64,000 nucleotides of DNA. Origin: Vitrella brassicaformis CCMP3155 (taxonomy: Eukaryota; Protista; Chromerida). Where the stretch lies: the NCBI GenBank assembly GCA_001179505.1, contig CDMY01000193.1, forward strand, positions 109,079 to 173,078, read 5' to 3'. Of this stretch, positions 33,202 to 64,000 are shown one piece after another. Every line of letters starts with the position of its first letter. Within the stretch, counting starts at the first letter, position 1. The position numbers and the translations under genes were made by a program. The notes beneath the pieces are model-generated. The model was not told the DNA's origin. It did not search any database and saw only the letters and a program-made list of their open reading frames with translations.

Positions 33202-33375
33202 GACGAGGAGTTGAAACCATCAGGAATGCGAGCTGAACCCTAGCCATGGAACCCTATAGCTGACGACTCGCCATTCGTGGATCGTCCATTCGTGAGGCTT
33301 CCTGGAGAAGTTCGAAGCGTGCGACGTGCATCAGATCATCTGTTCTTCATCTCTTTTGCTCGTCCGGGATTATCC

Positions 33376-33857
33376 ATGTTTCCGAGAGGCGAGGGCGCGA
33401 GAATCACTCAATCGGCTGGAGATGAAGCAATGTCTTCGAGAGGAGAGGGCCTGAGATGGGCTGGAGATGGGGGATGGAGAGCAGCGCCGGCTGCTCAGAG
33501 GCCCCCTCAACCGACCGGCGATGAATGGGCAAACGCGCCGGTCATCCTAGGCCTCTCATCCAGTTTCTCATCAGATTCCCCATCCTTACAGTCCGATCAA
33601 CAGCATGAGATTCAGAAGAAAACAGCAGTCTCTCTAGGCGAGCGCATTACGACCGCAGCACACGGCGACGAAAGACGGGGGTCGGTCACCTCGAACACGA
33701 GCACCGATGTGACAGCCAGCCAGAGAAGCGCCACAATCAACACCGACGGCAACAAGGGTCTCGGAGACGTGGGGGGAGATGTCGGCCGGAGGGATTCGTC
33801 TATGGGTGAGCTGCGTCCTGAGGAGAGCGCGATAGCCCAGTTGGCTCGTGAGTTCAG
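33376..33857 (+). CDS. Exon 1 of cassette membrane-protein gene (copy 1; remainder in the gap)
   Basis: MFPRGEGARITQ...AQLAREFR followed by AG|GTAAG donor at 33858, the same as copy 2. Confidence 0.6.
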
Positions 33858-33888
33858 GTAAGATGCACAGCAGGGTTAGATCGTATCG

Positions 33889-34188
33889 NNNNNNNNNNNN
33901 NNNNNNNNNNNNNNNNNNNNNNNNNNNNNNNNNNNNNNNNNNNNNNNNNNNNNNNNNNNNNNNNNNNNNNNNNNNNNNNNNNNNNNNNNNNNNNNNNNNN
34001 NNNNNNNNNNNNNNNNNNNNNNNNNNNNNNNNNNNNNNNNNNNNNNNNNNNNNNNNNNNNNNNNNNNNNNNNNNNNNNNNNNNNNNNNNNNNNNNNNNNN
34101 NNNNNNNNNNNNNNNNNNNNNNNNNNNNNNNNNNNNNNNNNNNNNNNNNNNNNNNNNNNNNNNNNNNNNNNNNNNNNNNNNNNNNNNN
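33889..34188. other. Assembly gap (300 N placeholder) inside cassette copy 1
   Basis: Run of 300 N. Confidence 0.99.
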
Positions 34189-34247
34189 GACAGACAGACA
34201 GGCGCACACCCCACAGTAGCTTGCCTTTGCCCCATCATTGTGGTCAG

Positions 34248-34387
34248 ATGGACTATGCTACGGCTGATTTCGGCAATGTGTCTGGCGACTTCCGCTGCTT
34301 CAAATGCACACACCCCGTCAGTGACCCAAACTTGTTGAACCGCCATCCATCCATCCATCGGCACACGCATCATCGCACCCTCTCTCT

Positions 34388-34419
<32 letters not shown>

Positions 34420-60127: not shown

Positions 60128-60154
60128 TTAGGGTTTGGGGTTATAGGGTTCAGG
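60128..60154. promoter_or_regulatory. Degenerate telomere-like/telo-box cluster upstream of the 60110 ATG
   Basis: Plus strand TTAGGGTTTGGGGTTATAGGGTTCAGG, which includes AAACCCTAA on the minus strand. Confidence 0.35.
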
Positions 60155-60221
60155 AACCCAGCAGAACGAGTGCGCATGCACATGAATATCACTTTGAATG
60201 TGCCCATGTTAGTTAGCTAAG

Positions 60222-61452
60222 CTATCCCCCCCTCCCACGCCCTCTTCCTCTCACTCCTTCCTGCTGCGGCGGCGGAGGTGGAGCCCCCCGCCCACCACCA
60301 CCACCAGCAGGCTGTGGCTGGTTGTTGTTGAAGCCGCCCCTGAAGCCCCGACCAGCCGTCGACAGGGAACACTTCTGAGACACCGCACACACACACACAC
60401 ACAAGTGAGAGAGAGGGTGAGATGATGCGGTTCAAGTTCGCTCAGTGAGACTCACTGACGGGGTGTGTGCATTTGAAGCAGCGGAAGTCGCCAGACACAT
60501 TGCCGAAATCAGCCGTAGCATAGTCCATCTGACCACAAGGATGGGGCAAAGGCAAGCTACTGTGGGGTGTGCGCCTGTCCGTCTGTCTGCCTACGGGTGG
60601 GTTGCGGAAGCAGTGCGGGCAGATGTGGTGCGACCTGCCCGTCTCCTCGTTCCTCACACTCAACGCCTACCGACACACAGAGAGAGGGAGACGTTGATCG
60701 TGAGACCGACCGGCCGACACCCTAACCAGACCTGAAAGTGGCAGATGGGGCATCTCTGATTGTGTGCCGTGAGCTGGCCTCTGGATGGCAGCTGCAGCAC
60801 GGTGGGGCAGTTGTTGCTGTAGTTGGTGCACACCAAGTAGCGATCGTCCCTCCTGCGATAGACTGACAGACAGACAGACAGACAGAGGGAGAACCTCACC
60901 ATCGCCGGCCAGCAGCTGTGGTCTGATTCATGTGTGTGTGTGTGCATGTGTGTGTACCTCCGCCCCCTGCCGCCCCACCACGGCCACGACCACGACCACG
61001 ACCGCCCCTGAACAAAATATGCACAGAGACACTCACGCATCCATCACCATAATGTCGGGTGCTGAAGAATGTCGGCTGACCTGCCCCTGCCCCTCCCCCC
61101 TCGCCCCTTGGCAGCAGCCTTGCCGCGACCACCACCACCGCCCCTGCCCCTTCCTCCTCCCGCCGCCCCACCATTGTTGCCAACCGCTCCACCAGCCAAC
61201 ACCGTCTGCAGCACGCACACACACCCCTGTGTGCTCGCGTGTGTGAGCAGTGCTCTCCTGTTTCCCTGCCTGCCTGCCTGCCTGGAGGTCCATCATGCCC
61301 TGGCACAGGCCGCACTGCGAGAACGGCTGCACGTTGCGGCCGGGAGCAGAAGCAGCCCCCCTGCCCCGTCCCCGTGCTCCTGCCTGCGATCGTTCCTGCT
61401 TCCGTATCGCTGTCCTTGTACGCTCCCTCACATGCCCCGCTCGCATCAACAT
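60222..61452 (-). CDS. Stand-alone DNA topoisomerase III-beta-type C-terminal Zn-finger + RGG protein (256 aa, no catalytic core)
   Basis: Seven exons in frame (61452-61282, 61205-61081, 61007-60958, 60862-60732, 60666-60595, 60528-60460, 60374-60222; 771 nt; first intron GC-AG). Motifs: PFSQCGLCQGMM, RYLVCTNYSNNCPTVLQLPSRGQL, RCPICHFQ, HICPHCFRNPP, FRCFKCTHPKC and RGRGRGRGG*. Confidence 0.8.
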
Positions 61453-61537
61453 ATTTACCCATACGTCAAGTCACTTTCATGTCGGAACAGTCAATGAATC
61501 GGTCCCCCTCTTTTCTCATCTTCTGAATATGCACGAA

Positions 61538-62317
61538 TCAGAAGAGTACATCAGAAAAAGTGGGGCAAAAAACCGTCGCATCGGCATCGCGCCACGTCAT
61601 ATGCATCGGCATAAATGGCAGCCACACGAGAACGCTGCAGGCACACACAGATGGTAGAGAGAGACATGCGGAATGTGGGACGTAATAGAGAGAAACATGC
61701 GCGACTGACCAAGTGGTAGCGGCCAGGAGGCAAGTCAGAAGCCTGCAGCGAACGACCCCTTTCTCGCGCCATGACGACATCATGGGCAGGTTTGCCCACC
61801 TGACCATGGCCACGAGGACCATCCCTTCACATGCGCACTCCATCGCAATGATCAGCGCGAGTCCAGTAATCTGGTGTCCGAGGGTGAGAGGCGATGCACC
61901 ATGGACGGCAGAGGCGATCAATATCGCCAGATTAATGTAAAGGAGGGAAGTCATTTCGGCCTGCATACGAATAGACAAAGATGAACAGAGTATTGCAAGC
62001 AATCTTGGCTGAGTATTGTACCAGAGACCACAGACTGATCTGTTCGCACAGAGAGCGCAGGTATCTTGACGGAAGAAATGAACAGTGTGAGACAGAGAGA
62101 AATGCATATGCATGTTCCCCCCATATGAGTACCGTGGTGTGATCTCCAGTAAAGCTAAGGCTGCCTGCAGACTCACAACGTTCTTGCCGAGCCTCGGGTG
62201 TGTTCTGATATAGGCGAGGGCTGCAAACGAGTACGATTTCTGCTGCTGGCGCTGCAGCCCTTCATGACTCTTGGCTGGCTCCTTTTTTGCAGCTATGGGA
62301 TTGTTGTTCTTGAACAA
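61538..62317 (-). CDS. Hydrophobic ORF (cassette gene 2, copy 3)
   Basis: 259-codon ORF homologous to 36860-37650. The upstream part of the + copy has a stop, so the true exon structure is uncertain. Confidence 0.45.
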   Translation of the reverse strand: MFKNNNPIAAKKEPAKSHEGLQRQQQKSYSFAALAYIRTHPRLGKNVVSLQAALALLEITPRYSYGGNMHMHFSLSHTVHFFRQDTCALCANRSVCGLWYNTQPRLLAILCSSLSIRMQAEMTSLLYINLAILIASAVHGASPLTLGHQITGLALIIAMECACEGMVLVAMVRWANLPMMSSWREKGVVRCRLLTCLLAATTWSVAHVSLYYVPHSACLSLPSVCACSVLVWLPFMPMHMTWRDADATVFCPTFSDVLF

Positions 62318-62864
62318 TGTATTGTTGAACCGGGCCTTAAGGAGCCTCTGTATCTGATACAGGGCAAGACACAGCAGGCATCTTTATTCAAGCATCTTTG
62401 TCCACGCCTACCGACAGAAACAACGCAATATCTGATGGACGCACGGATGGACAGAAGCACTCATTAATTCTTCCATCCATTCACACACCTTTCATTCGCT
62501 TGTATATCTCTTAGTGACTGGTAAACTTACGGGTGGGAAGAAGAATATCAAAGATCATGTCAAATCTGAGACAGACAGGCGATGGTGGCATCAGCGAGTA
62601 TGTGGGATTCACGTGGTCTACATTGAGATGAGAATGCTGTAGGCCAGCTTGCTGCTGAGTGTAGGCGCTTCAGCTTGTAGCATCCTGATCGCAACACACA
62701 CAAGATGCGATCATTCGATCAGAAGCACATTCACATGCAGCCCACCGGGGAAAGAGGATGTAAGCTATGGCTGGCAGCGTCATCAGCAGTGGATTGCATG
62801 TCGGAAGTCCCTCCTGAAGCACAACAGTCACCATCAAAGCGAATTCCCTGCTGCGTTTGTGGCT

Positions 62865-64000
62865 CTAGCTCTCACATGAAAGTACCTTAATGGATCGTAC
62901 CACCTTGTTGCAAATCCCTGCGGCAGGTAGGAAGGCACTAAGATGAATTACAGCCATATGAAACCTTCTCTCCGGATTCGCAGAAGCGTATCGAGGAGAG
63001 AGAAAATTAACCCATATGACTTTCATAGTGTACGCGATCACAAAAGCTGCCGTGGCCCTCATTGCATATTCCCGTGGTGCTGCAATCTTAAGCGACCCAC
63101 TGGCAGCAGTGCGGCGGAAGTATGCGTATGTGGAGACAATTAGAGAGCCCCAGACCGCAAAAAGAACGAGAAAGATAATCTCTCTTCCCCAGTGGCTCTC
63201 CAAGTGGTAGTGGTTTGCAAGCGATATTATAAGAGAAAGCGCCAGCGGCGGACTGAAAACGAACCACTCCTTCTTCAGCGCGGTAATCATTCTCCGCGGG
63301 TCAGATCCATCAGTCGTATGTACACAAATCAGCATTACCGCGATAATCAGTGTGATACGGCGAATCACATCGAAGGGGAGCCCAAAAAGTCTCGAAGTAC
63401 ATGAGTGAAAGTAGAGAAAGCTGAGGCCCACAAGGATGATGGCAATAAGCGAAGCGCCGGTCAACTGCAGTAGAATACATCTGGCGGCCCTTTTGATAAT
63501 CAGCAACAGTGGTTCAGGCGTAAAAACCGCACCGACAAGCACTTCAGAGCCGTCCACTGTCTCGTATTCGAGTGTTGTAGGGGCCTCTTCATAAAAGGCT
63601 TCGTATCCCGCGGCCTTTCTGAACGCAAGATACATGCATGCACAGATGTTTTAACAGCGATACGATCTAACCCTGCTGTGCATCTTACCTGAACTCACGA
63701 GCCAACTGGGCTATCGCGCTCTCCTCAGGACGCAGCTCACCCATAGACGAATCCCTCCGGCCGACATCTCCCCCCACGTCTCCGAGACCCTTGTTGCCGT
63801 CGGTGTTGATTGTGGCGCTTCTCTGGCTGGCTGTCACATCGGTGCTCGTGTTCGAGGTGACCGACCCCCGTCTTTCGTCGCCGTGTGCTGCGGTCGTAAT
63901 GCGCTCGCCTAGAGAGACTGCTGTTTTCTTCTGAATCTCATGCTGTTGATCGGACTGTAAGGATGGGGAATCTGATGAGAAACTGGATGAGAGACCTAGG
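62865..64000 (-). CDS. Two-exon multi-pass membrane protein (cassette gene 1, copy 3; 5' end outside window)
   Basis: Exon 1 ends at 63689 with AG|GTAAG, intron 63688-63619, exon 2 63618-62865 in frame (RKAAGYEAFYEE...). Confidence 0.7.

What the first reader, a model, noticed from the sequence alone, without database searches (positions are those of the whole stretch)
33310..64000. A roughly 4.2-kb three-gene cassette repeated in tandem and inverted around a 22-kb block of housekeeping genes
Seen: the same-strand unit [2-exon membrane gene]-[second hydrophobic gene]-[TOP3-CTD Zn-finger/RGG gene] occurs at 33310-34593 (middle in gap), 34819-38205 (3'-truncated) and inverted at 60222-64000+. 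Homology begins at a shared TTCGAAGCGTGCGACGTGC about 60 bp upstream of gene 1 and ends just after the TOP3-CTD stop codon. The first two genes look more A/T-rich and nearly microsatellite-free compared with host genes (by eye, not counted). The third keeps host-style introns. Inference: a mobile or amplifying composite unit that captured the 3' end of a host TOP3 gene (Pack/Helitron-like or segmental duplication), possibly a selfish or defence module. No transposase, TIR or TSD was recognised.
Basis: partly seen in the sequence, partly recalled or inferred. Interest (0 to 1): 0.82.

Follow-up and report, generated by a model that had tools for sequence, protein, structure and literature searches.

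The report
Locally triplicated two-gene block
A 4-kb stretch of the alga Vitrella, holding a membrane-protein gene known only from this alga and a small zinc-finger/RGG gene, lies three times within 31 kb (two copies in tandem, one flipped), and one copy has decayed into a pseudogene that is still transcribed; this is an ordinary local duplication, not a jumping element.

Summary
The repeat is real. Copy A is 33307-33888 and 34189-34604, with its middle in the assembly gap. Copy B is 34814-38191. Copy C is inverted at 60211-64000 and runs off the window.

The unit holds two genes, not three. It belongs to a multi-pass membrane-protein family found only in Vitrella brassicaformis, whose full-length paralogues (564-724 aa) span both halves.

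Copy B is a spliced, transcribed pseudogene with frameshifts, two lost splice donors and a stop codon. Its zinc-finger/RGG gene is cut off inside intron 2. A and C are 99-100% alike next to the gap but about 83-90% alike in the 3' tail. I read this as gene conversion, which would also explain the gap; if A is complete, the gap hides about 3.07 kb, not 300 nt.

I found no terminal inverted repeats (TIRs), target-site duplications (TSDs) or Helitron ends. None of nine paralogous loci carries the zinc-finger gene, so a mobile or defence cassette is not supported.

The TOP3B-tail reading of the third gene has only weak tool support. This is a local segmental duplication, of low to moderate interest.

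The parts
33307..33888 (+). Copy A, 5' part: leader, exon 1 of the membrane gene (ATG 33376, exon ends 33857) and the first 31 nt of intron 1
   Evidence: 99.7% identical to C 64000-63658. 20 sites A=C≠B, 0 sites A=B≠C, 1 site B=C≠A. An RNA joint 33857|35427 carrying C-type letters shows that A/C-type mRNA is spliced here.
33889..34188 (.). Assembly gap inside copy A. Its edges correspond to points 3,070 nt apart in copy C.
   Evidence: A DNA contig of run X1 running past 33888 continues with C-type intron 1 and exon 2 (tables 5 and 5c).
34189..34604 (+). Copy A, 3' part: end of intron 5, exon 6 (34248-34316), intron 6 and last exon (34429-34593, stop included) of the zinc-finger/RGG gene
   Evidence: 134/136 identical to C at first, then diverged. 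The indels in the last exon are 3 and 9 nt, so in frame. DNA contigs of X1 and X4 bridge 34590-34896 into copy B.
34814..37663 (+). Copy B membrane gene, a transcribed and spliced pseudogene. RNA-defined exons: ≥34783-35352, 35427-36093, 36176-36258, 36326-36392, 36495-36558, 36614-37027, 37110-37152, 37213-37463, 37546 onward.
   Evidence: Joints in RNA runs X7 and X11. Lesions relative to C and the paralogues: 19-nt plus 2-nt insertions that shift about 35 codons; a 1-nt deletion near 36231; an 8-nt deletion that removes a GTAAGT donor near 36650; a stop near 36920; a donor changed GT>AT near 37043, with the cryptic donor at 37028 used instead.
37742..38191 (+). Copy B fragment of the zinc-finger/RGG gene: exon 1, putative intron 1, the RGG exon 2 (38014-38120) and 71 nt of intron 2, where homology to C stops
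   Evidence: An RNA contig of X11 ends its match at the donor 38120|GT (table 7).
60222..61452 (-). Copy C zinc-finger/RGG gene, a 7-exon model of 272 aa. Exons: 61452-61282, 61205-61081, 61007-60900, 60852-60732, 60666-60595, 60528-60460, 60374-60222. Intron 1 would be GC-AG.
   Evidence: Model built from the sequence. All exon indels against B and A are multiples of 3. There are no RNA reads laid on C itself.
61538..64000 (-). Copy C membrane gene, whose 5' end runs off the window. Exons: >64000-63689, 63618-62886, 62813-62746, 62684-62622, 62565-62527, 62381-62133, 62064-62022, 61960-61710, 61634-61538.
   Evidence: Intron positions were transferred from B's RNA joints and from paralogue L005. 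An open frame of about 674 aa results only if the weak donor GTTTAC (exon ending at 62527) is used. C lacks B's intron 36094-36175.
36094..36175 (+). 82-nt intron found only in copy B
   Evidence: Spliced in X7 and X11. Absent at the same codon in C, in L002, L004 and L005 and in L003.

Best explanation
This is a local segmental duplication in the nuclear genome of Vitrella brassicaformis.

The ancestral segment of about 4.0 kb held two genes on one strand. The first is a roughly 10-exon gene for a multi-pass membrane protein of about 670 aa, from a family so far seen only in Vitrella. About 85 nt downstream lies a 7-exon gene for a 272-aa protein made of Cys-pair zinc-ribbon motifs and RGG runs.

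The segment now lies three times within 31 kb. A and B are head to tail, 209 nt apart. C is inverted, 22 kb further on.

Shown:
- B lost the 3' part of the second gene; its breakpoint lies inside intron 2.
- B's membrane gene carries several disabling lesions, yet it is still transcribed and spliced.
- One splice in B uses a cryptic donor, and one removes an intron found only in B.
- A/C-type mRNA is also made.

Inferred:
- A and C were made alike by gene conversion, or by a recent re-copying, over all but the last 280 nt or so.
- That likeness is why the short-read assembly broke inside A, and about 3.07 kb of A is probably missing from the gap.
- The copies arose by recombination or replication error, not by transposition.
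- The lower GC and the lack of microsatellites are traits of this membrane-gene family, not marks of foreign origin.
For: - Repeat geometry and identities.
- RNA runs X7 and X11 give eight GT..AG joints that chain exons from 34783 to 38005. DNA runs X1 and X4 give none.
- The family: phmmer against 1.84 billion representatives finds 14 clusters. All ten I looked up are Vitrella CCMP3155 or unnamed JGI contigs clustering with it.
- One gene, not two: paralogues P0002 (724 aa), P0008, P0006, P0018 and P0007 align as single proteins across both 'gene 1' and 'gene 2'.
- B's lesions. dN/dS between B and C is 0.5-0.65, with dS 0.17-0.27.
- C can be read as one frame of about 674 aa. Its intron sits at the same place as in paralogue L005.
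- Conversion pattern: 20 sites A=C≠B against 0 sites A=B≠C. The A and C tail has diverged, with indels that keep the frame.
- A-to-B junction: bridged by DNA contigs in two runs.
- Not mobile: no TIR, TSD or Helitron ends, and nine paralogous loci lack the zinc-finger gene.
- Family trait: paralogues also have lower GC and few microsatellites.
Against: - The interior of A is unread, and C's 5' end lies outside the window. The full extent and the outer breakpoints are therefore unknown.
- The only base that separates A from C in the 5' part (33552) is not seen in the DNA contigs of run X4.
- The A/C-type DNA contig of X1 has about single-copy depth (26 against 26-31). The tool warns that these depths are no copy number.
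- No RNA was laid on C itself. C's frame needs a weak donor 4 nt after a strong GTAAGT, which would shift the frame.
- Only nine paralogous loci, not the whole genome, were searched for further copies of the unit or of the zinc-finger gene.
Confidence: 0.72

Rival explanations
1. Assembly artefact. Copy A, or at least its 5' half up to the gap, is not a separate copy. It is reads of copy C placed a second time by the scaffolder, so the true locus has one tandem remnant plus B, and C.
For: - A and C are 99.7-100% identical on both sides of a gap of nominal length.
- The single A-specific base at 33552 reads T, as in C, in the only X4 DNA contig that covers it.
- The A/C-type DNA contig of X1 has depth 26.2, close to that of the single-copy B contigs at 25.9-31.4.
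Against: - A's 3' tail (34325-34604) clearly differs from C: about 83-90% identity, with 3-nt and 9-nt indels and another intron 6.
- That tail is joined to B by DNA contigs in two runs.
- A's 5' flank is unique sequence with DNA coverage.
- A single linear scaffold cannot hold the same stretch in both orientations without two copies.
- Contig depths are declared unfit as copy numbers.
Confidence: 0.15
2. A mobile or amplifying composite element (Pack-type, Helitron-like or similar) that carries the membrane gene and a captured 3' end of TOP3B.
For: - The homology has sharp ends close to the genes: about 60 nt before the ATG and about 11 nt after the stop.
- The composition differs from the flanks.
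- The membrane gene has many dispersed paralogues, among them another recent pair on two scaffolds (L004/L005, 92% over 2.65 kb).
Against: - No TIR above shuffled controls, no TSD, no 5'-TC or 3'-CTRR end.
- No transposase, Rep or helicase in or beside the unit.
- The start motif is absent from the paralogous loci tested.
- The zinc-finger gene is absent from all nine paralogous loci.
- Paralogues are old (25-55% protein identity) and sit among unrelated neighbours.
- The L004/L005 duplicate holds only the membrane gene and has other ends.
Confidence: 0.04
3. Gene fission. In the A/B/C lineage the membrane gene has truly split into two separately translated reading frames. The first ends after ..ISIFDMIFDILLPTRKFTSH. 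The second starts at the Met of AEMTSLL.., a residue that the paralogues lack.
For: - With the strong GTAAGT donor, C's frame breaks after exon 5.
- Both B and C have an ATG exactly at the start of the second half, where the paralogues have Leu or Val.
- In L002 and L003 the annotation also calls two genes.
Against: - C keeps about 100 stop-free codons of linker that align to the paralogues' linker (..SLQAALALLEITPRYLRSLCEQISLW..), which is unlikely by chance.
- An in-frame splice exists.
- RNA contigs chain all exons without a break in B.
- The annotated two-gene calls in L002 and L003 may be model errors.
Confidence: 0.2

Closest known systems
Segmental (tandem and inverted) gene duplication with pseudogenisation of one copy and gene conversion between the others
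   Same: - Copies of several kb lie within tens of kb, in both direct and inverted order.
- Introns are kept.
- One copy is truncated and carries frameshifts.
- There are tracts of near-identity with sharp ends next to older divergence.
- The short-read assembly broke at the most similar copies.
   Different: Nothing essential. The outer breakpoint of C and the inside of A are unread.
Helitron and Pack-type gene-capturing transposons
   Same: A unit carrying host-like gene pieces occurs more than once, and its ends lie close to the genes.
   Different: - No TIR, TSD, 5'-TC, 3'-CTRR or hairpin.
- No Rep/helicase or transposase.
- No copies of the unit at the other family loci examined.
TOP3B C-terminal zinc-finger domain plus RGG box (human residues 613-823 and 824-862; PMC12318649, PMC10969213)
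   Same: - The third gene combines several Cys-pair (C4-like) motifs with RGG runs, one of them at the very C-terminus.
- Exon 4's only NCBIfam hit is the C-terminal part of a type IA topoisomerase model.
- From my own memory of the human sequence, the motifs CPxC[FY]xNPP and CxxCTHPxC follow in the same order. This is a lead, not a test.
   Different: - There is no type IA catalytic core anywhere in the unit.
- A long RGG run sits between the first Cys pair and the rest.
- No Pfam zf-C4_Topoisom hit and no PDB sequence hit.
- The hit is far below the model's cut-off.
Uncharacterised Vitrella brassicaformis transmembrane proteins (e.g. CEM02662.1, CEM30062.1, CEM01824.1, CEM39640.1, CEL93660.1)
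   Same: The membrane gene of A, B and C aligns to them over both halves, at E down to 1.5e-35 and 25-56% identity. They share motifs such as EFREAAGYEA, RLKKEW, LSPRY, PRMLQAE and RWxNLPM.
   Different: The copies in this window are in none of the protein collections searched. Only these copies have the zinc-finger/RGG gene as a neighbour.

Membership tests
Helitron | 5'-TC and 3'-CTRR ends with a 3' hairpin, inserted between A and T | tested here: not met
   The unit starts GAAGTTCGAAG in A and GAAATTCGAAG in B. It ends ..AGCTCACT in A and ..AGCTAACT in C. A 3' hairpin was not searched for formally.
Helitron | Rep/helicase gene in autonomous copies | tested here: not met
   No such ORF or Pfam hit in or beside the unit. 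The whole genome was not searched.
TIR / Pack-type DNA transposon | Terminal inverted repeats and target-site duplication | tested here: not met
   The local alignment of the first 150 nt against the reverse complement of the last 150 nt scores 11-12, against a shuffle mean of 9 and maximum of 15. The flanks share no word of 5 nt or more, except a trivial CCCCAA for B.
Retrocopy / processed pseudogene | Loss of introns, poly(A) tail | tested here: not met
   All copies keep their introns, and B even has one more.
Segmental duplication | Copies of 1 kb or more of genomic DNA, introns and spacers included, without transposon hallmarks | tested here: met
   B and C align over 3.1 kb through exons, introns and the spacer between the genes.
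Segmental duplication | Each copy is physically distinct in the DNA | tested here: inconclusive
   B is distinct, and so is A's 3' tail. A's 5' part cannot be told from C with contigs alone.
Vitrella-specific multi-pass membrane protein family | Significant sequence similarity over both the N-terminal and the C-terminal helical parts | tested here: met
   phmmer E 1.5e-35 to 6e-4 for 14 clusters. tblastn of full-length paralogues covers both halves in B and C.
TOP3B C-terminal zinc-finger/RGG region | Several C4-type zinc-ribbon motifs followed by an RGG box (PMC12318649) | tested here: inconclusive
   - Cys pairs and RGG runs are readable in the model.
- Pfam zf-C4_Topoisom gives no hit.
- NCBIfam PRK07220 positions 606-642 hit exon 4 at E 0.0035 and 15.7 bits, against a cut-off of 635.
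- PDB sequence searches exon by exon give nothing relevant.
TOP3B C-terminal zinc-finger/RGG region | Descent from the organism's own TOP3B gene (shared exon structure or sequence) | not testable with these tools
   The Vitrella TOP3B gene could not be fetched.

The most novel reading that the evidence does not exclude
A and C are two real, inverted, near-identical copies kept alike by ongoing gene conversion. Each carries an intact free-standing descendant of the zinc-finger/RGG tail of topoisomerase III-beta. The nucleic-acid-binding tail of a topoisomerase would then live on as an independent, duplicated gene beside an alga-specific membrane-protein gene. Meanwhile the decaying copy B has just gained a new spliceosomal intron.
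Probability: 0.2. Interest if true: 0.5.

Novelty: new member of a known kind. Interest (0 to 1): 0.24.

Why it matters
- **Annotation.** Two, perhaps three, copies of an expressed gene pair are missing from the protein collections. Two supposed genes are really one, and one copy is a pseudogene.
- **Assembly.** The work explains an assembly gap and says how much sequence it probably hides.
- **Transposons.** It removes a candidate 'gene-capturing mobile element' from the list.
- **Intron turnover.** One 82-nt intron is present in only one of three young paralogues and is absent from the outgroup paralogues. That is a clean natural case for studying intron gain.
- **The zinc-finger/RGG gene.** It is a lead on whether a topoisomerase tail can evolve into an independent RNA-binding protein.

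Tried and rejected
- **Word-based protein searches.** Exon 2 of the membrane gene gave no hit. A family alignment gave only three hits because of the candidate cap. The RGG/Thr-His exon of gene 3 gave no hit.
- **Exact-product look-ups of window ORFs**, to obtain the official annotation or the sequence beyond 64000, found nothing on record.
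- **Two scans of metagenome contigs** for spliced transcripts of the unit found nothing.
- **ESM Atlas** look-up with exons 5 and 6 of gene 3 gave no usable hit.
- **Pfam** found nothing for any part of the membrane protein or its paralogues.
- **Fold of the membrane protein.** An AlphaFold model of paralogue P0002:170-724 (pLDDT 67.8, pTM 0.66) matched only generic helical bundles: Foldseek best E 0.05, Atlas TM ≤0.30, VIA Z ≤11 to designed proteins and 9.4 to TMEM87A. I draw no function from this.
- **Introner hypothesis.** I rejected the idea that the B-only intron is an introner-type repeat, within the 64 kb of the window and about 175 kb of loci at hand.
- **Retrocopy origin** was rejected because the introns are kept.
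- **Joined models.** Joined (spliced) protein models were built only inside scripts, from window coordinates, and compared locally with the window and the fetched loci. They were not sent to any database search or structure predictor.

Full report
**What genome this is.** Notes of this scan name the genome as the chromerid alga Vitrella brassicaformis. I confirmed this. All named relatives of the membrane gene are proteins of V. brassicaformis CCMP3155, assembly GCA_001179505.1.

**The observation.** Self-comparison of the window shows three copies of one unit.
- Copy A is 33307-33888 and 34189-34604, on either side of the assembly gap 33889-34188.
- Copy B is 34814-38191.
- Copy C is inverted, 60211-64000, and runs off the end of the window.

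The identities are:
- A against B: 93.1% over 582 nt, within which 300 nt are 99% alike.
- A against C: 99.7% over 343 nt, and 134 of 136 nt just right of the gap.
- B against C: 86.6% over 1051 nt and 78.4% over 2055 nt.

Where all three copies can be compared, 20 sites group A with C, none groups A with B, and one (33552) is private to A. The motif TTCGAAGCGTGCGACGTGC marks the start of homology in A and B and occurs nowhere else in the window. Homology between A and C ends about 11 nt after the stop codon of the last gene. From the start in A to the end in C the unit measures about 4.0 kb.

The membrane gene has GC 0.50-0.51 and no microsatellites. The flanks have GC 0.59 and about 32 microsatellite bases per kb.

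**The gap.** The left edge of the gap (33888) is 31 nt into intron 1 of the membrane gene. The right edge (34189) is in intron 5 of the zinc-finger gene. The matching points in C are 63658 and 60587, which are 3,070 nt apart. The two sides are therefore neither continuous nor in one frame. If A is a complete copy, the gap stands for about 3.07 kb. A DNA contig of run X1 that runs past 33888 goes on with 'CTGTTAAAAC' and C-type exon 2 letters, exactly as in C (tables 3, 5 and 5c). That contig could come from either A or C. The second gap (55960-56259) lies outside all copies and was not studied.

**Two genes, not three.** Laying contigs of four public runs on 33200-38600 showed that X7 and X11 are RNA and X1 and X4 are DNA. 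The RNA runs give eight GT..AG joints, and the DNA runs give none. The joints define these introns in B: 35353-35426, 36094-36175, 36259-36325, 36393-36494, 36559-36613, 37028-37109, 37153-37212 and 37464-37545. Overlapping RNA contigs chain the exons from 34783 to 38005.

A search of 1.84 billion representative proteins with exon 2 of copy C found 14 clusters (E 1.5e-35 to 6e-4). All ten I looked up are Vitrella proteins, or unnamed JGI contigs that cluster with them. The full-length paralogues are P0002 (724 aa), P0008 (688), P0005 (609), P0015 (568), P0006 (564), and P0018/P0007. They align as single proteins over 'gene 1', a hydrophilic linker and 'gene 2'. For example, P0007 reads ..PRMLQAEAVNLRSKLFYSVLISIFDLIMDISYPY..LQSALASLEVSPRYLRALSDQVNIWSTCELVALLFTNL.. 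without a break. The two 'hydrophobic genes' are therefore the two halves of one gene.

**Copy B is a pseudogene that is still expressed.** Against C and the paralogues, B has six differences:
- A 19-nt insertion followed by a 2-nt insertion. Together they put about 35 codons of a conserved helix (RLKKEWFVF..HLESHW) out of frame.
- A 1-nt deletion near 36231, which ends the frame at ..AIHC**.
- An 8-nt deletion that removes a GTAAGT donor near 36650.
- A stop codon (RR*QKS) near 36920.
- A donor changed from GT to AT near 37043. The RNA instead uses a cryptic donor at 37028, which shifts the frame.
- A break at 38191 inside intron 2 of the next gene.

These rest. dN/dS between B and C is 0.5-0.65, with dS 0.17-0.27.

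**Copy C.** Moving B's intron positions onto C gives conserved GT..AG pairs. Paralogue L005 has an intron at the place of B's lost donor. A search over all donor and acceptor pairs there found an open frame through all exons, about 674 aa with exon 1. It exists only if the weak donor GTTTAC (exon ending at 62527) is joined to the exon starting at 62381. The strong GTAAGT donor 4 nt upstream would break the frame. About 100 stop-free linker codons that align to the paralogues argue that C is still one gene, but this needs cDNA. A/C-type mRNA exists: RNA contigs with C's seven exon-2 letters are spliced at 33857|35427, at depths of 11 in both runs against 27.6 and 16 for B.

**The last gene.** From the sequence I built a 7-exon model of 272 aa for C (61452-60222). 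In order it has:
- a leader ending in ..SQCGLCQGMMDLQ;
- two RGG exons;
- ..RYLVCTNYSNNCPTVLQLPSRGQLTAHNQRCPICHFQ;
- ..HHICPHCFRNPP;
- MDYATADFGNVSGDFRCFKCTHP;
- an RGG tail.

Several points support this as a real coding gene. An RNA contig ends its match exactly at the donor after the first RGG exon (38120|GT). All exon indels between copies are multiples of three: 15 and 3 nt by codon alignment (18 and 3 nt in the DNA alignment), and 18 nt, between B and C; 3 and 9 nt between A and C. Intron indels are not multiples of three. The RGG exon has dN 0.014 against dS 0.14.

Two points are open. Intron 1 would be GC-AG, and one RNA contig in B runs up to 38005, 8 nt short of its end. The gene also starts only about 85 nt after the membrane gene's stop.

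**Is the last gene a TOP3B tail?** TOP3B has a catalytic core, a zinc-finger domain (human 613-823) and an RGG box (824-862) (PMC12318649; also PMC10969213).
- Pfam gives no topoisomerase zinc-finger hit.
- PDB sequence searches exon by exon give nothing relevant.
- The Atlas gives nothing.
- The one pointer is that exon 4's only NCBIfam hit is positions 606-642 of the archaeal type IA 'DNA topoisomerase I' model PRK07220. It has E 0.0035 and lies far below the cut-off.
- From memory, the order of the motifs resembles human TOP3B. I mark that as a lead only.

The organism's own TOP3B could not be fetched.

**Mobile element or duplication?**
- The first and last 150 nt of the unit do not form inverted repeats: score 11-12, shuffles up to 15.
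- The flanks share no duplication, and the ends are not 5'-TC or CTRR-3'.
- No transposase-like ORF lies in or beside the unit.
- I fetched nine other loci of the family, each with up to 10 kb on each side. Both halves of the membrane gene were traced in L002 to L005, and the family gene is present in all nine, among unrelated neighbours.
- None of the nine has any match to the zinc-finger/RGG gene, and the start motif is absent from the five loci tested.
- Another young duplicate pair, L004/L005 (92% over 2.65 kb, on different scaffolds), holds the membrane gene alone.
- The paralogues also have lower GC and few microsatellites, so the composition is a family trait.

The unit is a local segmental duplication.

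**A and C.** Near-identity on both sides of the gap ends sharply at about 34325. Beyond that point intron 6 and the last exon differ, with about 83-90% identity. I read this as a gene-conversion tract, or a late re-copying, laid over an older triplication. It would also explain why a short-read assembly broke there.

The artefact rival is not excluded for A's 5' half. The one A-specific base is not seen in X4's contigs, and the A/C-type DNA contig of X1 has about single-copy depth. On the other side, A's distinct tail is joined to B by DNA contigs in two runs, and A's left flank is unique.

**What the membrane protein does.** This is unknown.
- There is no Pfam family.
- The AlphaFold model of a paralogue shows a short beta hairpin, about nine helices, a disordered linker and three to four more helices.
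- Fold searches gave only generic helical matches.
- The Atlas feature search points to unnamed eukaryotic membrane proteins, which is only a lead.

**Limits.**
- Only contigs, not raw reads, were available.
- Read laying and the full-library protein search could be used once each.
- C's 5' end and A's interior are unread.
- The whole genome could not be searched.
- Joined spliced models were used only in local scripts, not in database tools.

Noticed in passing
window 36094-36175: An 82-nt intron (GTGGGA..CCTCAG) is present only in the decaying copy B and is spliced in two RNA runs. It is absent at the same codon in copy C and in paralogues L002, L003, L004 and L005. This looks like a recent intron gain. 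No second copy of the 82 nt occurs in the window or in the nine loci.
   Followed up: partly
L004:9472-12106 and L005:7224-9876: A second young duplicate of the family (92% over 2.65 kb) on two different scaffolds (CDMY01001045.1 and CDMY01000303.1). It holds the membrane gene alone. These two copies also lack intron 1, which A/B/C and L002 have, so intron positions vary within the family.
   Followed up: partly
window 38120/38121: An RNA contig of run X11 follows B's RGG exon up to the donor and then continues with 'GGGAGAAGCAAAAGCAAAAGGGGGTCTCAC', which is nowhere in the 64-kb window. Either a further paralogue of the zinc-finger/RGG gene lies elsewhere, or the truncated copy splices to a distant exon.
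   Followed up: partly
window 60732-60851 (-): Exon 4 of the zinc-finger/RGG gene has a single NCBIfam hit: the C-terminal region (606-642 of 740) of the archaeal type IA topoisomerase model PRK07220. The hit has E 0.0035 and 15.7 bits, far below the cut-off.
   Followed up: partly
window 35047 and 33552: The same C/T site differs between copies and between runs. B reads T in the window and in X11 but C in X1 and X7. A reads C in the window but T in X4. This could be a strain difference or patchy gene conversion in the 300-nt stretch that all three copies share.
   Followed up: no
window 38270-39300 (-): A proteasome-subunit gene lies directly after copy B's breakpoint. It has by far the highest RNA contig depth of the laid stretch (1300-1400 in X7).
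   Followed up: no
L001 (CDMY01000606.1, gene at 42749-43603 of 43776) and L009 (CDMY01000512.1, gene at the scaffold end): Two further family members sit at scaffold ends and are annotated as partial. This suggests that the family repeatedly breaks this short-read assembly.
   Followed up: no
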